From contig DF237443.1 of NCBI GenBank assembly GCA_000708835.1, positions 7,196-71,195 on the forward strand: DNA of 64,000 nt, given 5' to 3'. Below the pieces are notes generated by a model. That model made no database searches. It saw only the letters and a program-made list of their open reading frames with translations, and was not told the origin of the DNA. Below, piece by piece: positions 22,301 to 64,000 of this stretch. The stretch is from Klebsormidium nitens. Lineage: Eukaryota; Plantae; Klebsormidiophyceae. How positions within the stretch are numbered: the first letter of the stretch is position 1; the number at the start of each line of letters is the position of its first letter. A program made the position numbers and the translations under genes.

Positions 22301-22776
22301 CGTTTGGTGGTAAACCAATGTCTTTCTTGCTGCCAGCCTGCCAAGGCACACTGCCAGGTTGCAGCAGCGTGAATGATTGTATTAAGAGGTTTGCCCGCCC
22401 GTCGGGCGGCCCCTGATTGTTCAGCCCCGTGAAGCAGGCTGCGTACTACTTGTCATTAGGGGCCTGCTTGCGAACCCAGCGGATATGTCAGGGACGCTGT
22501 GGCTGAGGTGGATTATTTGCTGCCGTTGGCAGGTTCCGCAGCCGACTGCGAACAGCGGAGCAAGGTGCGGACACGATCTTGTGGCTGGCGTGCGTTGCCA
22601 AGGCGATGCTGGTGTCGGGGGAGTTTTACTTCGACCGCAACATTGCGGCCAAGCACTTAACCGGAGCTGGCACCCAGTATACACCAAAGCAGAGAGAGAA
22701 GCTGTTCGAGAAAGTCACGAGCATTTACGAGCGGACCTTGACAGGCCTGACTGCGAAAGTTGCCGAAGCTACGTGA
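19326..22776 (+). CDS. Short-chain dehydrogenase/reductase, DHRS12-like; exons 19326-19337, 19518-19579, 19914-19984, one or more in the N-gap, about 21009-21108, 21342-21563, 21858-22004, 22165-22259, 22533-22776
   Basis: LLVHNAGVM, FATNTLGPY, YARNK (YxxxK), SMHPGWVDT, RTAEQGADTILWL and GEFYFDR. The glycine-rich TGxxxGxG exon is lost in the gap at 20405-20994. Confidence 0.88.
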
Positions 22777-46692: not shown

Positions 46693-47871
46693 AACGGGCA
46701 GCCTGGCCTCTGGCCCTCAAGCCTTGTGCATACGCTCTTGGAATTGTGAAACTTTGATGAGGACTACCTCAGTCTGTGCGCTGCGCTTGAAAAGTTTGAA
46801 ATCAGAAACCGAGGCCCATGGCCGGCCAATATTGGCATGGGGTGCCCACTGCCCACTGCCGCCTCTTCAACTTCAAGTTGCATTTCGAGCTTTCCCGCAG
46901 CCGGAGTCCACCAGTACTGGCACCACACGAAGGTGGATTCATGAGCAAGCTTGCTAGATACCGTAGCAGCATTGTCGCAGCATTGCCGCAGCCGGCATGC
47001 CAAGGCCCCGGCGGCCGCCTAGCGATCAGGCTGGCGATCGAAGCGGCCGCGGCCTGCGGGCGGCCTGCACAACGGCCTGCAAGTTGGATGCCACCGTTAC
47101 CGCCTTTCCAAGCCTGCCGGACGGTGACGTCCAAGGCTGGTATTGCCGCGCCCGTTCAAAAAAAGGTACCTAGATAGGTATTACAGCTTTACTGAACCGC
47201 CAGGCGGTGTCCCTAAAACGCGGACCAGCAAACCGCGGAAAGCTGAAACCGCGGACCGTAACGATGCTCAACACTGAATTTACCGCTTCGGGGGGGTCGA
47301 ATATATTCCCTTTTCTTAGGATATTAGGATTATTTTGAAAGCGGTTTGGGTGTCCGCGGCCGCCACTGCGCAACAGCCGCGGCCCGCGCCGCGCCGATCG
47401 ACTAGGGCGCTGGGCGGCGCGCAGGCCCGGCCGGGTGGCGCTTGAATGGCACCGTCTGACTCGGACTGATTGGCCCGGCAGTGCTAGGCGCGCGGCCGGC
47501 CGACCGGCGGCCAGGGCTGCATAGGTCTGCGAGCTGGTCGGATCAAGGCTGGTCAACCTCCTTTCCATATCTTCCACTTCCACCAATGTTCACATAAAGC
47601 TCAGAAATTGTTTCAGTGATGGCAACAGCATTGCAGAGCTAAGGCGACAGATTCTTGTATGCTGCGGCGCCGCTTCTGTGGGCTTCTGTGTTAACATCAG
47701 AAGGGGATCAGAAGCTTCTCTGCTTTTTGTGTAGTTAGATAGAGCTGTGAATGCTGACTGTATGCTGGGAGGATTTTGAACTCCAAAGTCTGCAGAAGAT
47801 GCAAGGAGTATCATTTGCCAAAGCTGCTCACAGCCGCTCATATTTGACTTAGCATACCAGACCGCTGCGCA

Positions 47872-50800
47872 ATGGGGTCATCGGCAGCAAAGAATGTGTT
47901 CAAGCCGGTGGCAATAGATAAATCCTTTTTCGAGATGCAAGTGGGCACTGCAGAGCAGCAGAGGGACTGTTTGAACGCGGACTTGGAGAGCCCAATAGAG
48001 TATTTCTTGAGGTGCATTGACGAGCCATGGTCAACAATGGAAGGGTAAGCCAACAAAGTCCATCTGGCAGACCACTTCTGTTTGACGCGGTTGCGAACCT
48101 CGGGTTTTATCTTGCTTTCACGAGGGCTGTAGCCTGCATTGACTGGATCAAATGTGGGGATGTTTTGCATATGCTTGAGAAAAGGTTGATCAGATTGGGT
48201 GCCATTTGAGAAGGTTTGTTCGTTGTAGCAAGCTGGCTTGGGCGCACGGCCCCCGCTTGTATTTTTCAAACGCCCACAGCATATTCAATCTCAAACAATC
48301 CTCGGATCACCCATGCATTTTTGGCAATTTCTGGGACCTTAGCAGCCGCTTAGAATGCAAACACACTTGTAGCAGCGCCAAGCATGCAGAGCGTTGGGTT
48401 TGTTTGCGGTCTTAACATGTGCTAGCTCCTACTTGTCACGTGCGCTGCAAGCTAGTTTTGGCCATTACGTCCACGTCTATACAGGCTTTACGTCTTTGCT
48501 TCAAGCAGCTCAGCACATCTCATCTCCTCTCGTTGCAAAAACCTACGTAACTTTTATTTTAGGTGAAGTTATGGTTTCTCAATCTGCTTCGGTACGGGAT
48601 CTGTGATTTGAACTTGGTAATACATCTCTCACCATTCGTGTTTCAACCCCTCTAGGAATTTTAACGTGCGGCTGCAACGATTCAACACCTTCATGGGGGG
48701 CAGGTATGGAGCCTCTAGCCTTCCACGCAGTGATGAGGACATCTTGAAGCTTAAGGTACGCACCGTCAAGCAATACAGGTATGCAGGAAGCCCGTCTAGA
48801 TAAGCTGAATGTGGGGCACTGATGCGGGCTTTCTTCTTCGTAGACAGTACTGTTGTGGACTCTTTTTCCTTTCATGTTTGCTCGGGTGTTTGTTTCTTGC
48901 CCTTGTTTTAAGCACATGCAATTTACCATGACACTCGTGTTTGCCATTAAGTTGTCCTGTACTGTGCCTCCCGATGCCAAATGCACTCTGACGCAAGCTT
49001 CAATTTTTGCCCACTGATCTCAACTGACATATGATGTTGCTTTTGATATGCATGCTAGCTTTTTCATGAACCTAGTTAATAACAACAACTCCTGTGTGTT
49101 CTTCCTCCAGGAACAATACCCCGATCTCGTCACTCTTGCGCAACACGTCTCTGCATCTGATCTCAACTCCGCGGACTTCAAGAGCAGGCTCTGCGATCCC
49201 GCCCCCAATGAGCACTTCTTCATAGTGAAGGGGGCTCTCAGCAAGGCCCAGCAAGCGGGGGCTTTGAGAGCGTTAGTGCCAGAACTGCTTCCCATGACGT
49301 ACAAGGAGAGAAAGTCGAAGGGTTATCGGGACCCAATGGAGCCAAGAAACGGAATCAAGTCCCGCTGCGAAGGAGTTCAAGGGGGGCAGTTTGTTTTGTA
49401 CGATCTGCCAGAGGAAGCGACGGACTTAGGCGGGTTGGGGGCTCGGGAGCAGCACGACCGGCCAAAGTCGGGAGACACGTTTTTAGAAGTCTTTTCGGAG
49501 ACCACTGACGGAAAAAGAGTGGGGGCGATTGACATCGATGTGGCAGATCCGTTCGATGACCCCAAAACGTCGTTCTGCACGACTGTCGAGCGCATCAAGC
49601 GAGAGCTAGGTACGTGGCAAATTTTTAAGCCTGTTCATACATAGCTTGCACCTGTCTTCGTTGCTATCTCCCTCCGGTTGGCAGTTCAAGTTGACAAGTG
49701 CAGTTCGTTATCCTCAGACGCTTCAAGCCTCTGTTCTCTGACCGACCATTTTCGTGACAAGACGGGCTTACTGTCGGGGGTGCTCGATCTAAACAACGTC
49801 CTTCGGGTAGGGCATCATCAGTGGACCTGCAAGGGTGCAACTAGATTCAAAGCCTTTTCGTACCTTCAAGTGTTGGGCAGCCGTCCCCATCTTCTCCTTC
49901 AAGGAGGCTTTTCACCAGCTTTCCTTGGCCACAGTCTGATGCAAGACACTGTGGCAAGACGCACCTTCCGCTGGCCAACGTCGTCCATTTCACAGGTCTT
50001 CGCTCAGACTTGGAGACCCTTTTCAAATCATCCGACTCAAGGGCTCAAGTTCACGAAAGGCAGATGTGCTCTGTCTTTGCTCAAACAACTGCACTTCTGC
50101 TCTGCAGGGATTGATTGGCCCCTTTCAGATGACTACCTCTCGCATCCGGATATGCCGGCTGGTGTGTCGCCTCGCAAGCCTACCGCCTTTGCAAAGAAGA
50201 ATCACATTACGTGGGGGCACTTCGAGATGAACGGGTGGCCGGCAGTCAACATCATGTGTGCGGCAAGTTCGGCGCCGCTCGGTCGACTTGCGCAGCTCGC
50301 CAGGCTCAACGCCGCCGCCGACAACGTCGAGGTGCCCTAAAATTCCTGGTCGTTGTTTGATGCGTATCCTTTTCGCCCCCAGCGTTGTTCTCGCACTGTG
50401 TTCAAGATGATTTGTTTGCTCGAAGCTCAAGCCGTTCTCGCCTCGGACACTGAAAGTCTCATCTTACCTCGAATCTACCCACATAAAGTTTTACGACGAA
50501 GTGCTAAAATGGATCAGGTCATCAGCACTTTTTGGCTTCGAGAATGCCTGTCTTCCCCAACTATAGGTAGTCAAACCCCGGCGAGTGTTTTCTCCACAAG
50601 TAGACAAACCCCGGCGTGTGTTTTCTCAACAACCTCGTGGTTTTAGATCGTCTTCCCTTCGGCCAAAAACGGCGTCAACTTGGCCGAGTAGGTACGGAGT
50701 ACGCAGCTGTCTCGTATGATCATACTTTTTTGACTTTCATGTTCATCCCTTTTGCAGCTGAGTCAAATCCTCGACATGGAGGACCGCCGGGTTGCGGAGC

Positions 50801-52203
50801 AGCAGTCGGGTGAAGACGCCTCTAACGGGGCTCAGCTTGCAAGCGGGTCCCGGAGAAGCCTGGCTCGTTGTGGGTCGGATTAGACATCAGCCCGGACAAC
50901 ATGCAACGTGCTGAAGTACTATTCGCCCGCGCCTTCGGGGAGTACTTCGAAGAGTGCTCGTCTCCCCAACTTCTTGGGGAGACCGTTCCCCCAGTTGTAC
51001 GGGCAGAGATGGACGCCTACTCCCCCATGCAGCGCTTTCTCTACCTCAAGGACGGCTATTGGGCCCTCTCTCCGCAACTTCTATTGGACCACGGGATCAA
51101 AATCCATCTGATGTAAGCCTCCTTCTCGTTGCTGTTTTTCTCTCGCACCCTTCTCGTTCGAGCTCAATGATAGCGTTACCGTGATGATCAATAGGTGACC
51201 ATCAAAGTTCGTCTTATAGCTTTACCAACCAAGGGTATAGGCACACATCTTTCGGCTACAGAAGCTCCAAAAAGTACTCCGCCATGACTCAAGAACGTGC
51301 AACATTTGATTAGCCTTCAACTACTCTTGTCCAACTTGTCGGCGCTAGACGGTGATCCCAAAGTGATGGCATCACTGCTTCTGTGCTCAAGAATCCAGTG
51401 TTAGGTCGCGGAATTGCATTGAATTTGCCCTGGCCTACATGCCACCGGCTATCTATGCACTTTCCCGCTGTTACGCAGGTGGCAGGAGGCAGGGGACATC
51501 GCCCTGAACGGAGCGCACAAGAATCACTACGTGGTTTCGCCTGGAAAGACGCTGGCAGTGGCTTTCAACGTGGGACATGGAGAAGGTGTTGCGACCTGCA
51601 CACCTCCCCACAACCCCGTCGAGCGGACAACCCGGTTCTTCGCCAAGAAAAGTCTGGGCCACTCCTGGACTGAGTACTCGTGGCTACAAGGCTGGAACCC
51701 GTGGACGTTCCTAGAAGCGGTGAGGCGTCCTAAACACGTGTGCATTGATCCTCAGGAAAGTATGCAAGTAGTCTGCGGGGTTTCAGAAGAAGAATTGTTT
51801 CCTTTGAAAAGTCTGGATCGTCTGGTGGAATTTCAAGCGTTCATGTCAATCTCGAACATTTGTCCACAAGTGCCATCGCAAGGGGCAACTGAATCGATGT
51901 ACGATACTTCGAAACAAATGCACATCGGCTGCTTTGCGCGTGGAACTCTGCTGGAAAAGAAACGCACACACAGCTTTTTTGCGGCAGGCAAAGAGAGCTA
52001 AGGTGTGCCTCACTAGTCCTCATGGTGTTGCCGCCCCGTCGACCTCAAAAGTCAAACCCTGAAAGCGGTCATGGGGACTTGACTGCGCAGGTGTTCAACA
52101 ACAGCTTCACCGACAATCTGTCCAGCCCCGCAGTGGCGGCCACCTACCACCACGGGTTGCTGCAGTACGCACGGGGGGAGATCGGCCTAGCGGATCAGCC
52201 TTG
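47872..52203 (+). CDS. Divergent JmjC (KDM4/KDM5-like fold) coding exons: 47872-48044, 48656-48755, 49111-49609, 50108-50331, 50758 or 50844 to 51112, 51479-51719, 52091-52203
   Basis: MPAGVSP..PTAF...ITWGHFEMNGWPAVNIM...SLWVG...LSPQLLLDHGIKIHLMWQEAGDIAL...H..H.V..G..LAVAFN aligns by eye with KDM4 (GVNTPYLYFG...FAWHTED...SINY...KSWY...ISP.MLKKYGIPF..VTQEAGEF...YH.GFN.G...AE..N). Splice phases are consistent except at one acceptor. The start codon is tentative. Confidence 0.72.
50572..50631. repeat. Two ~33-bp tandem copies in an intron
   Basis: CAAACCCCGGCG(A/T)GTGTTTTCTC(C/A)ACAA occurs twice. Confidence 0.8.
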
Positions 52204-52301
52204 GTAAACGCTTCTACTCGTTTTTCTGACTTCAGCCGAACCCAGGCCATGTGCAGAAAGGCGAGCAATACGATCAAAGCCTTAACAATTCGTTTGCTTT
52301 T

Positions 52302-52475
52302 GGGCGGGTCAAACGGATCAAGGGACTGTGCAGAATCTGATTCGCGGTCGGGTCGAACGGATCAAGGGACTGTGCAGAAATCGAGTGGCGGGCGGTCAAA
52401 CGGATCTAGGGACTGTGCAGAAATTGACTTGCGGGTGGGTCGAACGGAGTAAAGGCCAGCAGAAACTGACTCGCG
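52302..52475. repeat. Four-copy ~44-bp tandem array containing the GGATCAAGG motif
   Basis: GGTC(A/G)AACGGATC(A/T)AGGGACTGTGCAGAA cores at 52315, 52359 and 52402, and a degenerate fourth at 52446. Lies in the intron 52204-52682. Confidence 0.85.
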
Positions 52476-52682
52476 TGAAGCATTAGCTGTGCTTTCCGTT
52501 TGTCCTCCTGGCTTGGTGAAGATTGATTTACGCATACTTGATGAGGACGTGGCATACCCTCGCCAAAACCAAACACGGACGGCGACAGTTTTCTGGAATC
52601 TACTACTTCACTTCTATCTACTTGAAATGAATCTCTCTGAACACCCCTGCTATCGTACCTGAATACCCCGTTCATTCGCTAG

Positions 52683-55600
52683 GTTTATCGACATTCTAAA
52701 GCGCTTGGAAAAGCGTTCAGAAGTCGCTGCTTCCAAGGAGGTGACGGTTGTGGCTTCCGGATCCGTTGCTTCTCCAGGAACCGAGTTGCCTTCCACCAGG
52801 TAATCCATCACGGTCTATACAAGTTTGGGACAGAGTTTCTGAGTTTAACCATCTCTACATTTGGTGCCCTTGATCTCTAAGGATGTCTCAAGGATTGACG
52901 TTGCACGACCCACGTTATATTGGTCAATCACGTGTGCGTCGCGGTACGCTATGCGGCAACTAGACACAAGTGCTTCGCACAGATTTGGTTGCTTTAATAG
53001 CAAGCGTCACAGGCTGTTACCAACCAGAAGCGCCTGGTTGAAATAGGGAGCTCTTAAAAAGGGCTTGCTAAAAGCCCCCCGGCCTGTCGCCTACTACTGC
53101 TTGAGTCACCTTGCCCTAACGCCCGCCTTTGGGGCATATCCCCGGAGCTTCGGAAAAAAGGCTTAAAACAGGCGCCGTTCACTAGCACTGGAGCCGTTTG
53201 CGCCCTGCCAAAACGGGCGCTGGCAGCGGGGGACAGCTCGGAGCATCGGATTAAGAGGCTCGACAAAGCCCCTGCACGATAGCTCATACGTCCGGTTGCC
53301 CGATCTTTTTGGTAAGGACACAAAGCTTTAACTTGCTTTCGTTTTTACTGCAGTGAAACGAACAACTGCGTGCGCGGCGCTTCGGAAGGAATGCTGCAGA
53401 TGGACAAGTCCGGGCCAGCCGTCGACGAACCTGCCGCCGCGCAGACCACCGCCAAGTAAGTCCGGATTCATTTACAAGCAGTCACAACTATATCAACGGG
53501 AAAGTCGACAGAGGCTGTGCACAAACTGATTGATAGCGCTCGCATCTTAGAGTTCATGCAGACAGGTTAAACCCGATCGCTTGGTATCACGGCCTGTTCG
53601 TCATCATACGCGCTCCCTGAATCTGGTCGCCATGAGAAGCATCGTTTCATTTGTTGCTGGAGATTATTTAACGTCGCCGTCCAATAGAGAAGAGCCGCGG
53701 CCATGTACATGTATAACGACAAATTGCCTTTGCAGACCCCCCCCACAAGCATCCGGACCCGCGACAGCAACACGCCGCGGCAACATCATGCCGCTCGTGG
53801 ACGAACGGCCGGCCAACACGTGAGTAAACCGGACAACTTCCCTGAAGATAAACTGTTCTGAAGGTCAATGAAGGGTGACCTTACAAATCGTTTCGAACCT
53901 CGTTTTCTGCTCCATCAAGATGCAATCTGGGTGTGATCGACCGGGTTGCGCCCGCTTCCTTCAGAACAATGCTGAGTATTGAGTAAGTTCCAACCACCTT
54001 CGGGTCTTTATTTCTTACATATGGAGGGCGGTGACGATGGAGTATTTGTTCAAATATGCGGTGCAATCCATCTGAAGTTCTCCCGCCTTGGAACAGTGCT
54101 CAGCAAGGACTATGCCTTAATTGATTGAGAGGAAGCTGTTTTCGAACCGTTTGCAAAGCTTCGCGGTCATAGATTACTAAACAACAGTTTTCTTATGCAG
54201 TTCCCTCCTCAAACCAGCCTGCTTGGCGTCGCGTTCACGCCCGGGCAGCACTAAGCTTCTCGTCGATGTACGGGCGGCCAACAGGTTCGTTACCTAGCAA
54301 CAAAGTTGCATTGTGCAACGAAAAATGACCTTTCAAATCCTGCCACGCCCTCCTGTCCGCTCGAAATGGTGGCGGCAGCCAGTTGGAGATCGATAACTGC
54401 ACTTTAAGGGTTTTAGAGTTTGCATACGTTTAATTGTGCCCTAGCTTCCGGTGTGACATGAATTTCGTCGGGAATTTTGACTGAGGGGAAAGCGGAGCTC
54501 GTTTTGTCACCCGTCTCAGGCTCAAGTGGGCACCGTGCGGAAAAGCTCGTCCGGATAACCGGAACGGTCACTTGAGCGAATGACAACCAAGCAATTCGGA
54601 AGCAGGCACAAAGCTCAAGTTGCCATCTCGTTCTTGGTGCAGTGGAACAAACAACTTGATGGTGGGCGCTGCAGAAGGAACGTTGCAAGCAAACACGTCC
54701 GGGACAGCCGTCAACCAACCTGCTGCTGCGCATACAACGGCCAAGTGAGTATGATTCATTCACAAGCACACGTAGCTCATGCAAACAATTACTGCCCAGG
54801 GCGGCTTGCGGTGCGCCGTCACAATAGGGCCCCCTTTCGAACATCGTTGACCAGTCAAAGCGCTCTGGATCTATGTACGCCTCCCCAAAGCGCCTGGCCC
54901 ATGAGGTTGCTAATTGAAGAGTAGACGATAGAGTAGACGATAACGCTCGCTTTTTCGAGATCAAGGCTGGGCATGCATTCAATGTCAGCTACCTTAGGGC
55001 CAAATATTCAGTATCCGTCTTTCACATGGGAAGACCTGATCGGTCTTTTTTCGTGAGCATACGCTCCTGTAACTCTTTCTAGCAAGTCGCACTATTTCGC
55101 CTAGAAAGCAGTATTCCATTCTTCTGCTGAAAAGGTACCATCTTCGTCTCGAAACTAAAGCGTCAAGGTGGGACACAAGTACGACGGTTGTTCTGTGCAG
55201 TGACCTTTTGGAAGCAGCCGGCCCGTTGACACGAGCACGGCGCCGCAACAACCCCATGCCGCTGGTGAATGAGCCGCCGACCGACAGGTTTGTGAACTCC
55301 CCTTCCCAACACAGTTGGACAGCTACGAAAGTTTGACATGGACGTCATCAAAGGGTGACTTTTGTTAATCTTGCAGGCGGTTTCCTTCAGTCGGGTGGCG
55401 GCCTGTGTGAGACCGATAGCGCCATCTTCGTTAAGATCGAATAAACTTGATTCAATGAGAAATTTCAACACATGAAGTGACCTGAATACGGCTTCCTATT
55501 TTCCACTTACGACCAAGTTGCCAGGTTTGGAAGGCGATCTTTCTCGGTCTCTTCCGTTCTCTAAGAAGGCAACTGACTTTCGTCTGTTTCGCTTACAGTG

Positions 55601-58600
55601 CTACGGTTGTTCTGGCGGGAGAAGGGGCACGGGAGGACGCATCCGGGCCTGCTGTCGACCTTGCCGCCAAGAAGCCGTCCGTTGCGAAAGCGGCTACTAA
55701 GTGAGCTTGCTCCGAAGCACTGCAGTGCAAGCTAGCGGGACTCAAACCGCATAACGCAAGGTCGATTCTTGAAACGGCTCCCTCGAACTTCCCATGCAGC
55801 TTAGATGCTTAGACTTTTTCTGTCATGCCCATTATGCAGATCTGAAACAAGGCAGCCCACGCACATCCGGTTCGACATGGACTCGGAGGATGAACGAGCA
55901 GAGGAGACCGGGTACGCCGCTCGTCAACGCTCTTTGCCTCGTTGGGCCTCGTTGGCATCCCTTTTTGTGTCCTAAAAGCTTTGTAACTTGCGGTACGTTC
56001 ACAATATCTTGCTTGTAGTGTTGTTCGTCTCGCTTTTTAACGAGTCGGAACGCTTGACCGCCTTCTCATGGGCCGCGTGTTGAAAGGGCAATGAGAAAAA
56101 GTCCTGGGAGCCCATCTGCCTTGAGAGCCCTGCAATTCGGGCGCGCTGAAAGTTCTTGACAGCTCGGCCCTCCAAAAAAACGGAGCCGGACGAACGAGCA
56201 CCACGGACTGTCGGCTGCCTGCCCCGGCTTGTTAAAATGGCGCGCCCATTGCGGGCGTTGTTGCTTTGTTCTGGATCACCGTCTTCCGCAATATGTCCAT
56301 CAATTCATATCTAAGGAAGCAACACATTTGCTCGTCCATTTGTTTTTGCTTCAGTGGCACGTATGATTTGGCGGCCAGAGCAACGGAAGTAGTAGTGCGG
56401 GAGGACACCTCGGGGCCCAGCGTTGATCCCGCTGCCAACCAGCCAGCCGCTGCCAAATCGACCTCCACGTGAGCTCGCGTTTGTTTCGGAATCGCTGCAG
56501 CGCAACTCCAGCACGACGATTTTGAGGCTCCTTTTAAGGCTCTATCTTAGTGCTTGGGTTCTACTGTCATGCTCTTTTTGCAATGACGACCAAGGTACCA
56601 TCTGCATGTCCGTTTTACCACGGGAATCCGAAGATGAAGCAACAGAGGATACACTGTACGCCGCCGATTGGCAGGCAGCCCTTACACGACTTCATGGAGA
56701 ATAGGTCTTGACAAAGCTAATGCTGCAAATGGAGGACCATAGGTCATTACAAAGCAGCTGCTGTTGTTGGGTGGAAGCTGGTCTTAGCACAACTCACTGA
56801 GCCGTTCTTCTCTGACAGTGACCTAACGGACGGGGTTGTAGAACCGAGCGAAGGCCCTGCAGGGGCATCCAAGCGGATGCTAGGAGAGGACGACCCTACG
56901 ACCTCTCATCGACCGTCTCAAGTGCCAGTCATTCGGTAAGTGAACCACACTAACAACTCGGATGAAACTGTTTTAATACCTTGATGAATTAACAAGGCGG
57001 CACTAGACCCGCTTTCTTTACCGTTCACTGAACCCTCTCTCAAACCCGCTCTGTCTCGGCCTTCCACCCGTTCACCTGCCTATCATGGAGCATGCAGCTT
57101 GGCCACACGTGTACGAAGTCTCTATCAAAACGCCCTTTGAATCCAAGCCTTCTGCTTCTCCGTCGAAGCCTAGGTTCTTGAAGTTTCTCGGCTCTCTGCT
57201 TCGTGGGCTTTAAATATCGGCCCATAGGACGTGAAAGATTGATGCGGAGTGGGGTTCTTTGTGCTCAGTAGCCCGTTGCTCAACATTCACGAAAGGTGAG
57301 GGCGCCTGATTGGCAGGTCAAACGGCACTTCCGATTTACTGCCAATCTGCCCTTGCTACAGTGAAATATCCATCATGCCGGGAGGAGCGGTCAGGGGAGC
57401 ATCGCCAAACGGCACGTCCGAGGCAACCGTTGATCCACCGGCGAGAGCGCAAATGCCTGCCGGGTGAGTTGCCTGTCAAACATAAGGATTGCAGCTCGAA
57501 CAAGCTGAAACTCAGCACCTCGTGGTGGAGGTAGAAAGCACGGCGCTTTCAAAACCCTCCACGACAAAGTAGAAAGAGAAACATCATGAACCCAATCTGT
57601 CACCTTGCCATAATGGCCGCACTCGAGGCGGGTCACAACTCGCCGTGTCGGATCAAGGCTCGTAAAGGCACCTCGGGCTCAGACACGTCCCAAGAGCCTT
57701 GTCTTATTGTCCGCCCTCGGAGCGATTACAAGCCCGGGGCTCTGGCAAATAAGCTTAGGGGTAGCTCTTTTGGCTTGTTCCACGCCTTTACAACCCTGCC
57801 GAACTTACGAGAACTTTAGAGCTCATACTAGAGGCACTTTACCTCGCATTAACAGTCGCACACGTTTACATGCAGTAGCACCGAAAAGGCGGCCGTTTTG
57901 GAAAAGGGAGCGCCAAGGAGAAGCACCATCAACGTCGAGTTTACGCCGAGGGAGTGGCCGTCAAATATGTAAGCCTCTCGTACTCCTAGCAATCACTTTT
58001 ATTCCATTGCGAAGTAGCTCTTGTCACCGTAACGAGTCTGCCGACTGGCGAACGGTTTTGAGGAGTCTAAGAAGCATCAGTGCTCTCTATGCAGCGACAG
58101 GTTGTCCAGACTTTGCTGCAAAGGCCGAATGCTCCGAGTGGCAAGCGGGCATTGGGTTTAATAGCAACGCAACCCATTCTTCGTCACTGCTATGGCGACT
58201 CTTGACAAGAATGGAGCGAGGTTGTTGTGAGTCGGTTGATCTCTTCGCTGATTCTCGCATGTACTGTTTGAACGCAACAGGATGATATGCATGGACATGA
58301 ACTGCAAACGCCGTCATGTGGGCACAACAAGACTTCACATGAAAGAACCGACCCCCATCGTCGCCGAGGGCGGGATCCAGGGCTTGGGCAAGCAGCTGCT
58401 AGGTACGCACGTTTCGTGACGCTTTAAGACGGTTGCATCACTTCCAGGCTCCAATGTGCACACAAATCTGCTTGGAGTTTGTGCTCATAACAACGCTACA
58501 TCTCTGGCTTACTATGATTGCGAACAATCGTTGCCCAAAGAGTGTGGGACGTACATAGATATTGCAGTCGGATCAATCCATTAAGCGATCTTTGAATTGA

Positions 58601-59373
58601 TACTATTTCGAGCTTTGAAGATGCTTCAGCTCGCGGTTGCTGCCTGGATGCCTAGGGTCAAAGTATTTGTATTCTGCCGAAAATAAACCAAGAATTATAG
58701 GTGGGAGTAATCATAGACACTGCTTTCCTTCATCCCTCGAGTACAGTGGCCAACAAGAAGAGGTCGGTCCTGCGAGCTCTCGCGGCAGCGGGGGATATGG
58801 CCTCGCTGATTGAGAAAGAGCGGCTGTCTCTAAGGAGGCGTAAAGAAGCTAGGTATGTAAAGTCGCCACCCAACAACCTCGAGTTTGAACTTGCTCCTGT
58901 GAAATGTGCGCAATTGAACAAGATGTCGGCGCAATTTTCAGTGAAGGTCGTTTACACCGACCGTTTCATATTCAATCCAGCTACCGGGGCTGGGATGAAG
59001 GCTCGTAGTTTCGAGGTTGTTGTTACGTTGACTCAGCACGATCTGATGTTGTGCTAAGTGACCTGTGACGTCAATTGCTAACTTGCTACTGAGGCCCGCC
59101 GTTGTTGTTACGTGAGGTCAATTACCCATGCTAGGTTTGTGTGAGCAGCTTGTTCATGAGCATCTTGAAAAGCTCCTCGAGCCACTAGCTTCCTCTTCGA
59201 GATCAATACGAACGACTCTGATGCTGTTCGAAGGCAGTTTTTACACTTTCTTTTGCCAGCGTCCCAAGGGAAGAGACTTATCGGGCCACCGAAGAGGCAC
59301 GCGTACCAGAGCCAACTCGGAAACAGGACCCCCCGGCCGTCGAGCCAGAAGCTGCAGACAGGGAGTTGGCCAG
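52683..59373 (+). CDS. Low-complexity linker encoded by 15 short exons, 13 of them phase 2-2
   Basis: Stop-free exons with GT-AG ends: 52683-52799, 53354-53455, 53736-53819, 54201-54284, 54643-54744, 55201-55287, 55599-55700, 55840-55911, 56355-56468, 56819-56935, 57362-57463, 57876-57968, 58281-58402 (2-1), 58747-58852 (1-2), 59260-59373. They continue the frame of the JmjC exons. Confidence 0.7.
56580..56655 (+). pseudogene. Decayed duplicate (pseudo-exon) of exon 55840-55911
   Basis: HVRF...SEDEATEDT versus HIRFDMDSEDERAEET, with the same GTACGC donor. The acceptor reads TGCAA instead of TGCAG and there is a 1-nt insertion. Confidence 0.55.
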
Positions 59374-59988
59374 GTGACAGATCCGCACCACAAGAGCTTC
59401 GTTTGCACGTTTTACTGCACCATGATCGTCATTGTCAATGCTTCTTTGCAACTTTTCGACCTGCAACTCGCGCGAGTTGTGCCCTGCACTTGATTCCGAC
59501 AAAAGTCGGATCAAAGCTTGCATCAAATTCAATGTTCATAAAAGGGAATGCGACAATTTTCAGGAGCCTTGGTACAAAAGGCCAATTGTTCGCGCATAAA
59601 TCTTTGTACGGAAGAGCCTGGTTCCAAGCAACCCTCAGCAGATCTACGTGAAGATCTGCCAACAGTGCCTCTGAAATTTTAACCATCAGGCCGTTTAAGC
59701 TTTGTTGATTCCGTACATTCTAGCGAAAAGGCAGATGTAGGAGCCTTGATCCGTCTGTTCGATTACTCGGTGGTACATGTTTCCATGTACGATTCTGAAA
59801 AGGGACGCGTCCCGGCAATTCTCAGCAAAGCAAACGTGAAGAGGTCACAGGCGCTTCCACAAATGCTTACGCCCCAAATACTTTGCTGATCCTTCTGTTT
59901 GCCACAAAATCTTAAACTTTTAAGCCCGGTGCACGAGCCTTGATCCGTTTGATCGTCCATGCTTTGTGCGCTGATCGGTTTAAGACAG

Positions 59989-61777
59989 TGAACCACCTAG
60001 ATCGTTTTCCAACTGATTGGATGCATCCAAATACTAATGCTTGGACGCATTTTGTGGCGTGCGCAGCGGAGGAACCCTTCCTGAAGCGCTATGACATTCC
60101 TAAGGATGGCCTTTGCATCTTCAAGGCAGTATTTGTGGGCATGTTGGCACAAGGGAAGCTCTATCAGGGAGGTTTACGCGGCTTGATGGACAACACCTGG
60201 AAACAAGCTCGGGCCCATACCGGTCGCTATTCCATTGATGGCGATCTCGAGCTGGAGTTGGAGGTTTTGATTGAGCAGTACGAGGAACGGGGCTTCAACC
60301 ATATTTTAGGGGACAGAGTGATTCGGGTGAGCGGTTGGTATGTACAAGTCATCAATGAGGGAGCTTTGAAGGGTAGGCGTCCTTCGTTGGTCTTCGTAGC
60401 ACGCCATGGTCGACGGATGTTAGTGACGTACCGAAGTCTCACGGAAGCAACACTTGAATTTGAAACTCTTACGCGTTTTCCTTGCTGAATGTCTGCCAAT
60501 GGCAGCGTCATACCCGTTCAAAACCATTGCTTCTTTTGGCTGTAGAGAGTGTACCAGAGTAGTAATTTCAGAATGCTTGGTGCATGTTTACCATTGCTTC
60601 ACTCTTTATTTCCGCCCATGCCGTTTGTGCCACGTACGATGCTACTGTATTTGAAAGGCTTCTATTCGATCAAGCACCGGGGCTGCTGCTTCTTGTGGGT
60701 ACGCTTAATACGAGTGAAGCCTTACATATTCCAACTTTGACCAGTTTCGACCAGTTGGCTATCAACTAAGTTTTATGGTTTGCTTTGTACAGATTTTGTC
60801 CGACGTTGTGGGCGTGGAAATCTTGGTCTATGCTCCCTTCCTTGCCGTCAAGCACGCCCAACGGTTCACGCCCGAGCAAGCAGCTGGTGGGACGCTTCGC
60901 CCGCTACACCTGCGCTTCAACGGGGTCAACCACTACGACGCCTATATACCAGAGGATGATATCGGGCCGTTGTACCAGAAAGAGACGTCAGCGGTAACGC
61001 TGGACAGGACCGCCACCCAAATCTTGAAACAGTTGGCGGAGGGGAAGGAGGATGCGGCAAAGGACACTTGGAGGGATTGTGCCCCTGGACGTCCTTGGAA
61101 TGACCGGGCTCCGCTCGCGCAAGTGTTGGAGCTAGCCGAACGGGCGTTGAAAAAATGGCCGCTTCTAGGGCACGCTCACTATGTGCGAGCCTTGGCTTTC
61201 CAACATAGCAAGGAGCGCGGAGCATGCGAAGGCGCGCTGGTTGCAGCTAAAGAAGCTCTGCTTCTCGGGGTGGAGGAGCGGCTTCAGGCAAGGTTGTATC
61301 GCACAATCGCAAAGGCGTGCTTTGATGCGGAGGACTGGGGCGGGGCTTTCCAGTGGTACTCGAAGTGTGCGAAAGAAGGTTGTCTGCGAGCTGAAGACTC
61401 CGTGTTTTTGGATGTGAGCCAAACCCGGTTGAGCGCTCAGGGGAGCGCAAAGGCGGAGGAAGTTGCTGAGAAGGTCTTCGACTTGTTGTCTGACCCACCG
61501 GCGGAGGCTCTTTTGGCGAAGTTCGATGCAGTCGTGGAGGGTTTGGCTGCTGGTGGCGGGGGGGGCGGGAGCGGATCGGAGATAGACTCCGAATCAGAGT
61601 CCGAGGAAGATTCAGACCATGATGAGCCTCCTTTCCAAAACGTGCCGGATGGCGCCGGCCCACCCGGAGGAGCGGGGCAGGCTTCGGCCAACGAGCAGTC
61701 CGGCGCGGCGGCACGTGGTGGTTCGTCAGGAGTGCGACCGGACTTCGTTAATCTCGAATCCTCAGACGAGGAGGATG
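59989..61777 (+). CDS. OTU-family deubiquitinase domain plus TPR-like helical region and acidic tail; exons 59989-60326 and 60793-61777
   Basis: YDIPKDGLCIFKAV (OTU Cys box: D at 60105, C at 60114). A phase-0 join gives GDRVIR|ILSDVVGVEILVY. LHLRFNGVNHYD is the His box (H at 60931). Then A..ALKKWP....AHYVRALA and LYRTIAKACFDAEDW..AFQWYSK resemble TPR helices. Confidence 0.78.
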
Positions 61778-62544
61778 GTAAGAATGCAACCAAGCTAGGC
61801 CTGGTGAGAAATAGAGGCTTGCTTCAGTGAGTATAAGTTTGGCGACGTAGGTCATAAGCGAGCTTTTCAGCGGATCAAGGCTGGTGGCCGCTAATTGTTT
61901 CTTCACACATTTCCATACACTAATATCTAGAAAGCGAATCATGTTGTCCTTGTCCAACAAAGTTCTTGGAGTTTCTAGCTTCAAGATTCTTGCACCCATC
62001 ATCACACTTATGACACTGTACACAAGCTGCTGTTCAATTGAGAAGTTTTGAGTTCACGTTGTACTGAACAAACTAGCCGCCTTCGTATTCAACCTTTTGC
62101 ATCCTGGCAGAGGCCGCATGAGGACGAGGCGCCGGCAGACCTGTAGATCGCCAACTTCATTGATGCATCACCTGAACTCGAAGCTCTCAATCAGAATCAT
62201 GCAAGCAAGTTGGTCATTGTTAGAGTCAGTCCCGGTTGCTTCGTTCCAGCTACCATATCAGAGGGCGGCTGCCAAACAAAATCCATTGGCCAACGTCAAG
62301 TCGTCCCGCTTTGTGACCCATGTAAAGCAGATCAACTTTGGGCGATCCGTAGTCCCCTAGTGATCATAGCACAAGCTTTCAATGTAGACAAAGGGTCACC
62401 TTTCAGGCCGTGCAACTTTACAAAAAAAGAGAAGCACTAAGCTTTCAGATTTCGGTCATGTTTACCAGCCTTGATCTCGATTTCCTGGCTGACCAAGTGG
62501 AAATGTGTGAACAGGGACAAATTGAAGGGTTTCCATTTGTGCAG

Positions 62545-63459
62545 GCCCAACTGGCAAGAGAGCTCGCCCGAGCGTTGGAGGATTGGATCCTGGGAGCGCT
62601 TACGGCTATGGCTGCGTACTTTACGAGCGCCGAGCGGACTGGTTAAGCTTGGAGGAGGTCGACAAGCTTGTCGACGGTATGAATGTTACGCCAAGTTTGG
62701 TCAGCAAGCGGCCACCGTACGCTCCACGTGGCGGAACGGTCTTTGTTGTAGACCGTTCCCAGATGGAGCATCAAGAGGATGCTCTATATGCTTCCGGTGG
62801 AAGGTGGTTCAACAACGGGGCCAAACCCGTCCACGGCGGAAAGCTCCGGAGCAGATATTGGAAGCACAGCTCGTCTTGCAACCATGACGAGTATTGCAGC
62901 GCCGTCGGAGAAGACGACTGCAAAGGCAAATGCTTTCAGCACCGTTCTGGGGCCTCCGGTGAGCCGCTGCACAAAGATCGGAAGTTTGAGAGACGGGTGT
63001 GGGTAGGCGTGGATCCACAGGGGAACGAAGGTGGCAAGTACGTGGTCATACAGTTTGTCGGCGACGAGACAACAGTCAGGGCAGATCCGCACGGAAACCG
63101 CGTCCACAACCTCGACTTAACCTTTGAGAAGATCTTCCGGTCGACCCGGGAGGAGATGAAGCGACGTGCTTCAGTGGGAGAGTCAGCTAATAAGATCCGG
63201 AGGCAGATGCAGGCCAAAGCCAGGCACCCCGGAGAGGCGCCAAAAAGCTACAAGCAAGCCGAAAACGCAAAGGGGAGTGTGGACGCGGAAAAGCGGGGGG
63301 GGGGGCGAAGAAGTCGTGGGACGACCTTAACGCCATCCTGACTCAGAGGATGGAGCAGGAGATTGCGGACGAAGACGCCAAGGTTCCAGGGGCGCATCGG
63401 TTTATCCAGGACGTCAACTACAATGGACGCGATCTGATGGTCGTTTGCTTCTTCAGAAG
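62545..63459 (+). mobile_element. PHGN-type (CG-1/GCM-like) N-terminal domain of a Mutator-like transposase; frameshift at a G11 run (63295-63305); catalytic domain not in window
   Basis: VSKRPPYAPRGGTVFVVD......D......RWFNNG...IQFVGDE......PHGN....F.K..RST...MK...PKSYKQAEN, and after the shift WDDLNAIL...RFIQDV, follow the pattern I recall for MULE-associated transposase N-termini. The exon has a good acceptor (TTTCCATTTGTGCAG at 62544) and a donor after 63459. Confidence 0.55.
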
Positions 63460-64000
63460 GTTGGTATTTGTACAATGATACACCTTGGAAAGAAGGCTTT
63501 GAAGGAGTCGAGCCTCTTGAATCTATCCTTTGACCGCTCAGAGACCACTCATCAGTTAGTACTTGTGCGCTTGAAGCTCTGTTTATCGCTCTCTTTGAGC
63601 GGGTCGTCTATGCGCTTAGCAAAATCGCAAGCTGCACTTGCAGATAATGCTACTCACCGTAGGGCCGCTATTTGGGTTGTTCATGGAGCCGCTGTCACAG
63701 TTTATTAGCATAAGGTGTCTACAAAGATATTTCCTGGACTATTCTTACGAGTTTCCGTTGCCTACCTCTAGTGTACCCCTTGATTGGGGCTTGATTGGGT
63801 CTTGATCTGTGCTACATGTACGTTTTAGCTGGCCGTCAGTGGTGAGAGGTTTGATTTAGGATTGTTGAGCCTACAACTGATGCTTTGTCAACGTTTGAAT
63901 CACAATCTGTTCAAGTACCCATCCTTTTCCGCCTTCTGAAATGTATTGGATTGACTCCTGCACGTCCCTTGATCCATTGAACTTGGATGTGACGGTTGGA

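What the first reader, a model, noticed from the sequence alone, without database searches (positions are those of the whole stretch)
47872..63459. Putative single giant gene JmjC - repeat linker - OTU - TPR - Mutator-like transposase N-terminus: a DNA transposon carrying its own chromatin erasers
Seen: about 25 plus-strand exons with canonical splice sites join in phase over 15.6 kb and total roughly 1,800 codons. The OTU-TPR exon ends in phase 1 (GAG GAT G|GTAAGA, 61777). The transposase-like exon starts in phase 1 (CAG|GC CCA, 62545), giving ...SSDEED|GPTGKRARP... Established: MULEs often carry Ulp1 or OTU proteases, and Arabidopsis VANDAL elements encode sequence-specific anti-silencing VANC proteins. 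Inference: a histone-demethylase-like domain and a deubiquitinase fused upstream of a transposase could counter host silencing at the element's own loci. I know of no described element with this architecture. Three weak points remain: the acceptor near 50758-50844, the 59373-to-59989 link, and a G11 frameshift.
Basis: partly seen in the sequence, partly recalled or inferred. Interest (0 to 1): 0.92.

Follow-up and report, generated by a model that had tools for sequence, protein, structure and literature searches.

The report
JmjC gene spliced onto Mutator-derived deubiquitinase
One busy, intron-rich transcription unit in a charophyte alga joins a JmjC-like gene to an OTU protease-TPR-DNA-binding gene that descends from the front part of a Mutator transposase, but the main mRNA holds two reading frames and no transposase core, so it looks like a transposon-derived gene rather than a proven jumping element.

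Summary
Partly right. One 6,219-nt contig reaches 3,160 nt further upstream, matching my 19-exon model from ATG 47872. So it is one transcription unit, but not one ORF in the main mRNA. The acceptor is 60067, not 59989. The upstream frame stops at TGA 60092-60094, and OTU is in another frame. The G11 frameshift is a genome/RNA difference: RNA has G12, and the ORF ends at 63475.

Domain calls: OTU is supported (motifs, language-model hits), TPR is confirmed by fold, and JmjC stays at motif level. The last exon is a CG-1/WRKY/FAR1-type DNA-binding module. Its few homologues include a protein passing Pfam thresholds for CG-1 plus MULE. In a relative's contig the same OTU-TPR-DBD exons are followed by a Mutator DDE-like ORF and a SWIM-like motif. 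Here the ORF ends about 30 residues before the DDE would begin, with no splice in the main mRNA, no TIRs and no second copy in the window.

Both halves are under purifying selection (dN/dS 0.11-0.17). An 11-copy motif is confined to the locus. Best reading: a Mutator-derived DNA-binding deubiquitinase gene co-transcribed with a JmjC gene. Mobility is unproven. The scan's other notes on this stretch are first-reader notes only.

The parts
47435..47871 (+). Inferred 5'UTR and transcript start region
   Evidence: Contigs reach 3,133-3,160 nt upstream of 58281, and the modelled CDS to 57968 is 2,723 nt. The k-mer share of 0.36 implies about 360 nt of UTR. Inferred, not mapped.
47872..48044 (+). 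ORF1 exon 1 (ATG; protein begins MGSSAAKN)
   Evidence: Exon-chain model; donor GTAAGC seen in the sequence.
48656..48755 (+). ORF1 exon 2
   Evidence: Model. The exon end and donor are conserved at the start of relative contig L003.
49111..49609 (+). ORF1 exon 3: N-terminal region running into the start of the JmjC-like barrel
   Evidence: 70% identical homologue P0006 on L003. Nucleotide similarity stops at the exon edges, 49108-49619. dN/dS 0.12.
50108..50331 (+). ORF1 exon 4 with a candidate Fe(II) H-x-E motif (..TWGHFEMNGW..)
   Evidence: Model. The motif is read from the sequence. No Pfam or PDB hit at exon level.
50758..50809 (+). ORF1 exon 5 (weakest exon of the model)
50884..51112 (+). 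ORF1 exon 6 (JmjC-like middle)
   Evidence: Model; no Pfam or PDB hit.
51479..51719 (+). ORF1 exon 7 with a candidate distal His (..GAHKNHYV..AFNVG..)
   Evidence: Model. Motif-level only; no PDB or Atlas hit.
52091..55911 (+). ORF1 low-complexity linker exons (model): 52091-52203, 52683-52799, 53354-53455, 53736-53819, 54643-54744, 55201-55287, 55599-55700, 55840-55911
   Evidence: Exon-chain model. There is weak old duplication between cassettes. No direct RNA mapping.
56355..57968 (+). ORF1 exons 56355-56468, 56819-56935, 57362-57463 and 57876-57968
   Evidence: They sum to 426 nt, matching the contig break points at 427 and 456 nt upstream of 58281. The loose-end 30-mer maps to 57939-57968.
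58281..58402 (+). RNA-confirmed exon (ORF1 frame)
58747..58852 (+). RNA-confirmed 106-nt exon; skipping it would put ORF1 in phase with the OTU frame
59260..59373 (+). RNA-confirmed exon, open in both the ORF1 frame and the OTU frame
   Evidence: Codon score is +0.39 in the ORF1 frame and +0.18 in the OTU frame.
60021..60023 (+). ATG in the OTU frame, intronic in the dominant mRNA; possible start of a separate 741-aa OTU-TPR-DBD protein
   Evidence: Unspliced contigs across 59576-60093 have about 3.5% of the main depth.
60067..60326 (+). RNA-confirmed exon: the end of ORF1 (9 codons) and the OTU N-terminal half
   Evidence: The Atlas gives 76 of 100 top hits in OTU clusters. dN/dS 0.107 against L001.
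60092..60094 (+). TGA stop of ORF1 (context CTA TGA C), five codons before DIPKDGLC
60114..60116 (+). Codon of the putative catalytic Cys of OTU (DGLC)
   Evidence: Read from the sequence; conserved in L001 and L002.
60793..60969 (+). OTU C-terminal half with the His box (NHYD; His codon 60931-60933)
   Evidence: H47-Y48-D49 are invariant in the three-species alignment A2. RNA-confirmed exon.
60970..61437 (+). TPR module
   Evidence: AlphaFold2 pLDDT 80-95. Foldseek hits to consensus TPR, CHIP, SGT and OGT at probability 1.0. Atlas gives TPR clusters.
61444..61777 (+). Disordered acidic/Gly-Ser linker, ending in phase 1
   Evidence: pLDDT below 50; junction confirmed.
62545..63116 (+). CG-1/WRKY/FAR1-type DNA-binding module, including the ..VIQFVGDE..PHGN.. 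motif
   Evidence: Pfam CG-1 E 0.027-0.034. Homologues P0002-P0005. Fold hits CAMTA, WRKY and FRS.
63117..63475 (+). Helical tail conserved with pre-DDE transposase sequence; read with the RNA's extra G
   Evidence: Alignments A1 and A3. L002 stays in one frame across it.
63284..63294 (+). G11 run; RNA has G12 in three of four runs
63476..63478 (+). TGA stop of ORF2 (G12 reading)
63479..64000 (+). 3'UTR; it continues 15 nt past the window
   Evidence: Unspliced at full depth in four runs.
47540..63975 (.). Eleven copies of RGATCAAGGS (extended to about RGATCAAGGCTSGT) on both strands, all non-coding: 47540, 52315, 52359, 52867, 54958, 57650, 59743, 59937, 61872, 62468, 63966
   Evidence: 11 observed against 0.57 expected, with 0 of 100 shuffles reaching 11. 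None lies outside the locus. Three copies occur in the homologous intron of L001.

Best explanation
The locus is one strongly expressed, intron-rich transcription unit, from about 47.4 kb to at least 64.0 kb, probably in Klebsormidium nitens. Its dominant mRNA of about 6.2 kb strings together two coding parts in different reading frames.

ORF1 is about 1,030 aa. It has a KDM6-like JmjC region, recognised only at motif level, followed by a low-complexity tail. It ends nine codons after splicing into exon 60067.

ORF2 is about 725-741 aa. It consists of an OTU cysteine protease, a TPR module, an acidic linker, a CG-1/WRKY/FAR1-type DNA-binding module and a helical tail. This is the front part of an OTU-bearing Mutator-superfamily transposase. 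A fuller version, with a DDE-like core and a SWIM-like motif, survives in a relative.

In this genome the expressed ORF stops about 30 residues before the catalytic core would start. The product is therefore a transposase-derived, sequence-targeted deubiquitinase, not a transposase: a domesticated or decaying Mutator derivative that has become transcriptionally coupled to a JmjC gene.

Shown: the exon structure of the 3' half, the frame break, the domain folds (TPR and DBD class), the Mutator linkage in relatives, and purifying selection.

Inferred: that the DBD binds DNA, possibly the locus-restricted RGATCAAGGCTSGT motif, and brings the OTU activity to chromatin; that ORF2 is translated from a minor mRNA using ATG 60021; and the exact upstream exon chain.
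For: RNA joints and contig lengths. Splice sites and frames. The exon model and its three independent length checks. The last exon has only four homologues, one with Pfam CG-1 plus MULE above gathering score. Shared motifs in alignments A1 and A3. Fold hits to CAMTA CG-1, WRKY, FRS5/FRS11 and NAC. Collinear OTU, OTU-TPR and DBD exons in L002, followed by a MULE/ISL3/Transposase_mut-like ORF and CYCTSGAKCSH. The L002 DBD exon ends at a GTAAGG donor, whereas the window reads through to a stop and RNA is unspliced there. OTU. TPR. dN/dS 0.107-0.167 for the OTU exons and 0.12 for the JmjC-side exon, with similarity ending at exon edges. No inverted repeats and no paralogue in the window. Ordinary host genes lie upstream. 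OTU fused to MULE transposases is already described in Medicago (PMC1702500). Recurrent domestication of Mutator transposases by loss of catalysis is described in 10.64898/2026.08.24.746577.
Against: Nothing past 64,000 can be read, so DDE exons may lie just beyond; in L002 the DDE starts about 420 nt after the DBD exon. All RNA contigs stop at 64015, and the window may end at a scaffold end, so a repeat boundary is as possible as a poly(A) site. Minor spliced isoforms would be invisible in assembled contigs. The route by which ORF2 is translated is unknown, yet ORF2 is clearly under selection. The JmjC identity rests on motifs only. Copy number in the genome was not measurable.
Confidence: 0.55

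Rival explanations
1. One reading: the whole block is an autonomous, or recently autonomous, giant Mutator-like transposon. Its transposase gene carries JmjC and OTU 'chromatin erasers'. The DDE and SWIM exons lie just beyond the window and are joined by a minor or conditional splice.
For: The relative L002 has a DDE-like ORF and a SWIM-like motif right after the orthologous DBD exon. The window ends only 525 nt after the stop. Plausible donors exist at 63459/63464. The locus-confined motif with a tandem array resembles target motifs of transposon-encoded VANC proteins (PMC5735166). Other unverified scan notes describe Mutator-like elements with protease or ubiquitin cassettes in this genome.
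Against: The dominant mRNA in four studies is unspliced past the stop at full depth. The ORFs are out of frame. No TIRs were found in 44-64 kb and no second copy in the window. A 6.2-kb contig assembles without repeat-induced breaks. There are about 24 introns and strong purifying selection. No JmjC-like sequence lies in the 7 kb upstream of OTU in L002/L004.
Confidence: 0.15
2. The functional product is the single fused giant protein of about 1,712 aa (JmjC, linker, OTU, TPR, DBD). It would be made from a regulated minor isoform that skips the 106-nt exon 58747-58852, or by a +1 ribosomal frameshift at the ORF1 stop (CUA UGA C). Under this view the dominant mRNA is the 'off' form.
For: Skipping the 106-nt exon restores one open frame from ORF1 into DIPKDGLC. 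Exon 59260-59373 is open in both frames. The ORF1 stop lies five codons before the OTU Cys box. ORF2 lacks its own AUG in the dominant mRNA yet has dN/dS 0.11-0.17. No rise in depth downstream of 60067 points to an internal promoter.
Against: No contig shows the skipped form in any of four runs. Codon usage in 59260-59373 favours the ORF1 frame (+0.39 against +0.18). There is no evidence for frameshifting. The relative L002 has a 95-codon in-frame extension with a Met upstream of its Cys box, so ORF2 can stand alone.
Confidence: 0.15
3. These are two ordinary neighbouring genes, a JmjC gene and an OTU-TPR-DBD gene with its own promoter near 59.9-60.0 kb. The joined contigs would reflect read-through 'conjoined' transcripts or assembly across shared k-mers, with no functional coupling.
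For: The frame break lies exactly at the 59373/60067 junction. There is an in-frame ATG at 60021 and low-level unspliced RNA over 59500-60093. No JmjC was found upstream in L002/L004.
Against: The spliced junction carries about 96% of the depth, with equal depth on both sides in four studies. The same rare motif occurs in the non-coding parts of both halves and nowhere else in the window.
Confidence: 0.1

Closest known systems
MULE transposases fused to an OTU-superfamily protease (Medicago truncatula; Babu et al. 2006, PMC1702500)
   Same: An OTU papain-like protease sits in one polypeptide with a Mutator-type N-terminal DNA-binding domain. In the relative L002 there is also a MULE DDE-like core.
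   Different: There the OTU is C-terminal to the transposase; here it is N-terminal and followed by TPRs. The DNA-binding module here scores as CG-1-like rather than as a classical WRKY-GCM1 zinc finger. The expressed ORF in this window has no DDE core.
Domesticated Mutator transposases FAR1/FHY3, FRS and MUSTANG
   Same: They are transposase-derived, under purifying selection and expressed as host-like genes. Their N-terminal DNA-binding fold is of the same class: FRS5 and FRS11 are among the fold hits.
   Different: FAR1 and MUSTANG keep the (inactive) transposase core and the SWIM finger. Here only the pre-core part is kept, and it is joined to OTU and TPR.
SETMAR (a primate SET histone methyltransferase gene spliced onto an Hsmar1 mariner transposase; from my own knowledge, with the name recurring papers)
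   Same: A chromatin-modifier gene whose transcript splices into a downstream transposase-derived coding exon. The transposase DNA-binding part is the conserved piece.
   Different: SETMAR is an in-frame fusion. Here the dominant junction is out of frame, so the JmjC ORF stops nine codons after the join.
VANDAL21 VANC anti-silencing system (Hosaka et al. 2017, PMC5735166)
   Same: The locus has such a confined motif with a 44-bp tandem array.
   Different: There is no sequence relationship to VANC. Binding of the motif by this protein is untested. The effector domains here would be enzymatic (OTU, perhaps JmjC).
CAMTA CG-1 DNA-binding domain
   Same: These are the best fold matches (probability about 1.0), with a weak Pfam CG-1 hit. 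The homologues P0003 and P0004 pass the CG-1 gathering score.
   Different: The window's own score (14.3-14.6 bits) is below the gathering score (23.5). TM is only about 0.35. There are no TIG, ankyrin or IQ domains.
KDM6 (UTX/JMJD3) JmjC demethylases
   Same: The motif pattern around the H-x-E and the distal His resembles KDM6. This rests on my reading and on two other first-reader notes.
   Different: No profile, structure-sequence or language-model search supported it at exon level. The spliced domain could not be submitted.

Membership tests
Autonomous Mutator-like transposon (MULE) | DDE transposase core (Pfam MULE / Transposase_mut) in the encoded protein | tested here: not met
   The ORF stops at 63476-63478, about 30 residues before the position of the first catalytic motif in P0003. 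No MULE hit on any window ORF. Sequence beyond 64,000 is not readable.
Autonomous Mutator-like transposon (MULE) | Terminal inverted repeats | tested here: inconclusive
   No inverted repeat of 25 nt or more in 44-64 kb, but any right end would lie outside the window.
Autonomous Mutator-like transposon (MULE) | 8-11-bp target-site duplication and multiple copies | not testable with these tools
   Only 64 kb of the genome is available. There is no paralogue within it. The scan index was blank by sequence, which means nothing.
Autonomous Mutator-like transposon (MULE) | N-terminal WRKY-GCM1/FAR1-class DNA-binding domain homologous to that of MULE transposases | tested here: met
   Homologue P0003 has CG-1 plus MULE above gathering score. 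Shared motifs. Fold hits to CAMTA, WRKY and FRS. The orthologous exon in L002 precedes a DDE-like ORF.
Domesticated transposase-derived gene | Purifying selection on the transposase-derived or linked coding sequence | tested here: met
   dN/dS 0.167 and 0.107 for the OTU exons against L001. The DBD exon against L002 has dN 0.42 with dS saturated.
Domesticated transposase-derived gene | Loss of the catalytic core in the expressed product | tested here: met
   Dominant mRNA in four studies. Minor isoforms are not excluded.
Domesticated transposase-derived gene | Single-copy, syntenic orthologues without termini | tested here: inconclusive
   Orthologous exons occur on three short or medium contigs (L001, L002, L003), but flanking synteny and copy number are unknown.
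OTU deubiquitinase/cysteine protease | Cys box (D-G-x-C) and His box (H-Y-D) in the right order | tested here: met
   DGLC at 60105-60116 and NHYD at 60928-60939. The His box is invariant in A2. The Cys box is conserved in L001 and L002.
OTU deubiquitinase/cysteine protease | Significant match to the Pfam OTU profile (PF02338) | tested here: inconclusive
   No hit on either half-domain exon. The domain is split by an intron, and the spliced sequence could not be submitted. The Atlas gives 76 of 100 top hits in OTU clusters at 0.88, which is a lead.
TPR repeat proteins | Stacked helix-turn-helix repeats matching solved TPR domains | tested here: met
   Model pLDDT 80-95 over residues 60-215. 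Foldseek probability 1.0, with TM by target up to 0.81, to consensus TPR, CHIP, SGT and OGT.
CG-1 domain (CAMTA type) | Pfam PF03859 at or above the gathering score | tested here: not met
   14.3-14.6 bits against a cutoff of 23.5. The resemblance is at fold class and through homologues only.
JmjC / KDM6 demethylase | Profile- or structure-level match to a JmjC domain | tested here: inconclusive
   No Pfam, PDB-sequence or Atlas hit for any single exon. The domain is spread over at least four exons and could not be submitted spliced.
JmjC / KDM6 demethylase | Fe(II) triad H-x-D/E ... H | tested here: inconclusive
   Candidate HFE lies in exon 50108-50331 and a candidate His in exon 51479-51719, both read from the model translation. 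The assignment rests on remembered KDM6 patterns.

The most novel reading that the evidence does not exclude
The block is a self-targeting chromatin-eraser module of Mutator origin. The transposase-derived DNA-binding domain would recognise the RGATCAAGGCTSGT motifs that are confined to the locus's own non-coding DNA, are conserved in a relative, and are replaced by a different amplified motif in a more distant one. It would bring an OTU deubiquitinase to its own chromatin. Through exon skipping or a +1 frameshift at CUA-UGA-C it would also bring a JmjC demethylase. That would be an enzymatic counterpart of VANC anti-silencing, carried by or inherited from a transposon.
Probability: 0.12. Interest if true: 0.9.

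Novelty: new variant of a known kind. Interest (0 to 1): 0.55.

Why it matters
Transposase domestication is a main route to new DNA-binding regulators. Mutator elements with accessory proteases are known, but their function is not. Three things make this locus useful.

1. It provides an expressed, selected, catalytic-core-less derivative (OTU-TPR-DBD) alongside a fuller relative that still has a DDE-like core. Together they form a natural before-and-after pair in an early-diverging streptophyte lineage.

2. It shows a chromatin-enzyme gene spliced onto transposase-derived exons, like SETMAR but caught out of frame. That raises a concrete question about how the second ORF is translated.

3. It has a rare motif confined to the locus, which gives a directly testable target for the DNA-binding domain.

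The CG-1 plus MULE architecture seen in an animal homologue also hints that the DNA-binding domain of CAMTA transcription factors may share ancestry with Mutator transposase domains. I found no paper describing this link.

Tried and rejected
**Searches that gave nothing**
- Pfam on single exons of the JmjC and OTU regions, apart from a weak CG-1 hit on the last exon.
- PDB sequence searches on five exons.
- The Atlas on JmjC exon 51480-51719.
- Two JGI metagenome scans with the OTU-TPR exon and with alignment A2.
- A homology search with L002's DDE ORF, which found only itself.
- tblastx of 7 kb upstream of OTU in L002/L004 against the window's JmjC and linker exons.
- A search for TIRs or paralogues in the window.
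- A poly(A) signal search at the 3' end, which was uninformative.

**My own errors**
-, and protein 4, used wrong codon registers. Searches corrected this.
- The first loose exon-chaining run over-called tiny exons and was replaced.

**Ideas I retracted or dropped**
- I first thought the window had lost the first catalytic Asp at ..VVCFFRR.. Alignment with P0003 shows that segment lies about 30 residues before the first catalytic motif.
- Exon models ending 57968 in the other two phases were rejected, because their exon sums (457 and 614) do not fit the contig break points. One gives a stop at the junction and the other a stop in exon 58747.

- Spliced proteins could not be handed to Pfam, structure or fold tools without typing long sequences, so those steps were omitted.
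- The organism's own proteins and transcripts were not retrievable from the protein collections.

Full report
**What is there (3' half, measured).** I laid assembled RNA contigs from four runs of four different studies on 58001-64000. They give the same exon chain each time...57968 | 58281-58402 | 58747-58852 | 59260-59373 | 60067-60326 | 60793-61777 | 62545-64000 and beyond. All introns are GT..AG. The last exon is unspliced at full depth to 15 nt past the window end in all four runs. Three of the four assemblies carry one extra G after 63294.

One contig is 6,219 nt long, with 3,160 nt lying upstream of 58281. Another run's contig reaches 3,133 nt upstream. The 30 nt preceding 58281 in the RNA map to 57939-57968. 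The plateau RNA k-mer share for 58000-63900 is 0.47-0.48. That equals the exonic k-mer fraction of this six-exon structure, so no further introns are hidden there.

**Upstream half (modelled, with three independent checks).** I chained GT..AG exons under an open-frame constraint, with codon scores trained on the confirmed exons. The first, loose run over-called small exons. A stricter run gives a best chain of 19 exons and 2,723 nt from ATG 47872 to 57968. It ends in the phase that stays open through the RNA-confirmed exons 58281-59373.

- Contig lengths leave 410-437 nt for a 5'UTR.
- The RNA share of 47400-52300 plateaus at 0.36 in more than ten runs. That equals the modelled exons plus about 360 nt of UTR.
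- The contigs of two runs break 427 and 456 nt upstream of 58281. The last four modelled exons sum to 426 nt, so both breaks sit at the acceptor of exon 56355 (junction +1, and junction +30, which is k-1). The two rival exon sets predict 457 or 614 and do not fit.
- Exon 48656-48755's end and donor, and exon 49111-49609, are conserved in a relative's contig. Similarity stops at the exon edges.

I therefore accept one transcription unit from about 47.4 kb to at least 64.0 kb. Direct read-level proof of the upstream junctions was not possible.

**One unit, but not one reading frame.** In the dominant mRNA the frame open through exons 57876-59373 has the best codon scores (+0.10 to +0.39 per codon, no stops). 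It runs into TGA at 60092-60094, nine codons after the 59373/60067 junction. In exon 60067-60326 only another frame is open, the one encoding ..DIPKDGLC.. That frame has stops in exons 58281-58402 and 58747-58852 and no ATG before the catalytic Cys.

So the main mRNA carries two ORFs. ORF1 is about 1,030 aa. ORF2 covers OTU-TPR-DBD and is open from 58843 to 63475 in the G12 form. The spliced junction carries about 96% of the depth (152 against 5.3 in run X6). Depth does not rise downstream, so there is no sign of a strong internal promoter.

ORF2 is nonetheless under purifying selection. dN/dS is 0.167 (OTU-C/TPR exon) and 0.107 (OTU-N exon) against L001. The JmjC-side exon against L003 gives 0.12, with the same dN. 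How ORF2 is translated is unresolved. There are three candidates:

- ATG 60021 in the roughly 3.5% of RNA that is unspliced or starts in the intron. This would give 741 aa.
- Skipping of the 106-nt exon 58747-58852, which I verified restores one frame. This would give 1,712 aa.
- A +1 shift at CUA-UGA-C, five codons before the Cys box.

None of these is tested.

**The G11 'frameshift'.** RNA has G12 in three of four runs. In the relative L002 the homologous coding sequence stays in one frame across this point. P0002's tail aligns with the window's post-shift frame. With G12 the ORF ends at 63475 (stop 63476-63478), followed by at least 540 nt of 3'UTR.

**Domain identities.**
- *OTU.* The Cys box DGLC and the His box NHYD are in the right order, and the His box is invariant in three species. 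The language-model atlas puts 76 of its top 100 hits in OTU clusters, with a score of 0.88 and recognition above threshold. Pfam does not score either half-domain alone.
- *TPR.* AlphaFold2 on the three-species alignment gives pLDDT 80-95 for residues 60-215. Foldseek returns consensus TPR, CHIP/STUB1, SGT and OGT TPR domains at probability 1.0, with TM by target up to 0.81. The atlas agrees.
- *JmjC.* No tool supported it at exon level. The call rests on H-x-E and distal-His motifs in the model translation, and on my memory of KDM6 patterns. I rate it likely but unverified.

**The 'transposase-like' last exon.** An exhaustive HMMER search of 1.84 billion representatives found only four relatives.
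- P0002 is the orthologous exon in a relative, at 51% identity.
- P0003 is 611 aa and lies on a 611-kb contig. It passes the Pfam gathering scores for both CG-1 (28.5 bits) and the MULE transposase domain (30.7 bits).
- P0004 is Capitella teleta R7TPW2, with five CG-1 domains (E 4e-40).
- P0005 has no Pfam hit.

All share ..(V/I)IQ(Y/F)(L/V)GDE..PHGN.. and downstream motifs with the window. An AlphaFold2 model (pTM 0.62) matches CAMTA CG-1 domains best (probability about 1.0). WRKY factors, FAR1-related FRS5 and FRS11, and NAC domains follow. TM is only about 0.35, so this assigns a fold class and not family membership. Foldseek on PDB gave nothing significant.

Babu et al. 2006 established WRKY-GCM1-type DNA-binding domains at the N-termini of MULE transposases. 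They also noted Medicago MULE transposases fused to an OTU protease (PMC1702500).

P0002 lies on a 14.4-kb ENA metagenome contig (L002/L004). tblastx shows the OTU-N, OTU-C/TPR and DBD exons in the same order and on the same strand. Downstream, ORF 11046-11774 matches Pfam MULE over the whole profile (2-99 of 99, E 1e-3). It also matches DDE_Tnp_ISL3 (2.8e-3) and Transposase_mut (0.03). All three are below gathering score but belong to one superfamily. ORF 12261-12971 contains CYCTSGAKCSH, a CxCxnCxH pattern like SWIM.

L002's DBD exon ends at a GTAAGG donor. At the homologous place the window reads ..VVCFFRRLVFVQ-stop, and RNA is unspliced there. Aligned with P0003, the window protein ends about 30 residues before the first catalytic motif.

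There are caveats. L002's OTU-N exon needs two frame changes, from low coverage or from decay. Its DDE ORF has no other homologue in the word-indexed database. Its 7 kb upstream shows no similarity to the window's JmjC or linker exons.

**Is it a transposon here?** No inverted repeats of 25 nt or more occur in 44-64 kb. Nothing else in the window resembles the locus at DNA or protein level. Upstream neighbours are ordinary genes: a short-chain dehydrogenase and a hybrid histidine kinase. A 6.2-kb transcript assembles without repeat breaks. The gene has about 24 introns.

These points favour a resident, transposase-derived gene. However, the right side is unreadable. The neighbouring scan window is offset by only 7,195 nt, so my window may end at a scaffold end. 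All RNA contigs stop at 64015, which could be a repeat boundary rather than a poly(A) site. Mobility is therefore unproven, not excluded.

**A feature that ties the two halves together.** RGATCAAGGS, extended to about RGATCAAGGCTSGT, occurs 11 times on both strands. All copies lie in UTRs or introns between 47540 and 63966. Six are in the JmjC half and five in the OTU half, and none lies elsewhere in the window. The expectation is 0.57, and 0 of 100 shuffles reached 11. Three copies form the 44-bp tandem array at 52307-52455.

The closer relative L001 has three copies in its homologous OTU intron. The more distant L002 lacks the motif. Instead it has 20 copies of AAAAGAACCC, all on one strand, in its introns. 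This resembles the way VANC targets accumulate and diverge in VANDAL elements (PMC5735166).

**Verdict.** The best reading is a Mutator-derived OTU-TPR-DNA-binding gene lacking the catalytic core, co-transcribed with and spliced out of frame onto a JmjC-like gene. The organism is probably Klebsormidium nitens; that name comes from an earlier follow-up note and I did not verify it independently.

This is a new variant of known kinds: OTU-bearing MULEs, domesticated Mutator transposases and SETMAR-like captures. It is not yet a demonstrated 'transposon carrying its own chromatin erasers'.

Noticed in passing
P0003 and P0004 (homologues found): P0003 passes the Pfam gathering scores for both CG-1 and the MULE transposase domain. 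Capitella teleta R7TPW2 has five CG-1 domains followed by the same YLGDE..PHGN tail. This suggests the CAMTA DNA-binding domain and a class of Mutator transposase DNA-binding domains are related. I found no paper in the library stating this.
   Followed up: partly
L002 2233-12155 (same as L004 +1155): There are twenty copies of AAAAGAACCC, all on the minus strand, so GGGTTCTTTT in the transcript. They sit in the introns of the OTU-MULE gene and include a tandem array of about 175-bp period at 2800-3440. This parallels the window's own locus-confined motif, but with a different sequence.
   Followed up: partly
window 63284-63294: The genome and one RNA run (X6) have G11, while three RNA runs have G12. 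This could be a homopolymer assembly error, a strain polymorphism or transcriptional slippage. Only G12 keeps the conserved tail in frame.
   Followed up: partly
window 64000, with RNA contigs ending at 64015: All four RNA assemblies end 15 nt past the window, and the window may itself end a scaffold, since the neighbouring scan window is offset by only 7,195 nt. That points to a repeat boundary or graph branch rather than, or in addition to, a poly(A) site. There is no AG in 63970-64000.
   Followed up: partly
window 60964: Run X5 has a contig whose sequence enters the OTU-C/TPR exon at 60964 from 30 or more nt that are absent from the window, with no acceptor AG before that point. It may be a chimeric contig or a diverged second copy in that strain.
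   Followed up: partly
window 56355: RNA contigs of two runs break exactly at the acceptor of exon 56355. This indicates alternative splicing or intron retention at the start of the last repeat cassette.
   Followed up: partly
window 57614-58282 and 59169-59648: Two unusually long open frames (223 and 160 codons) run through introns in non-ORF1 frames. They may be chance or relics of older exon structure.
   Followed up: no
window 50567-50632: A 33-bp tandem duplication (91% identity) lies inside the intron between the JmjC-like exons.
   Followed up: no
window 47872-47895: ORF1 begins MGSSAAKN, a Gly-2 context compatible with N-myristoylation. That would be unusual for a nuclear demethylase.
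   Followed up: no
window 21321-22313 (+) and 25417-26700 (-): Upstream neighbours include a short-chain dehydrogenase exon and a hybrid histidine kinase with a CRE1-type receiver (Pfam). These are ordinary host genes.
   Followed up: no
It shows no detectable similarity to the 47.9-51.7 kb JmjC-like exons.
   Followed up: partly
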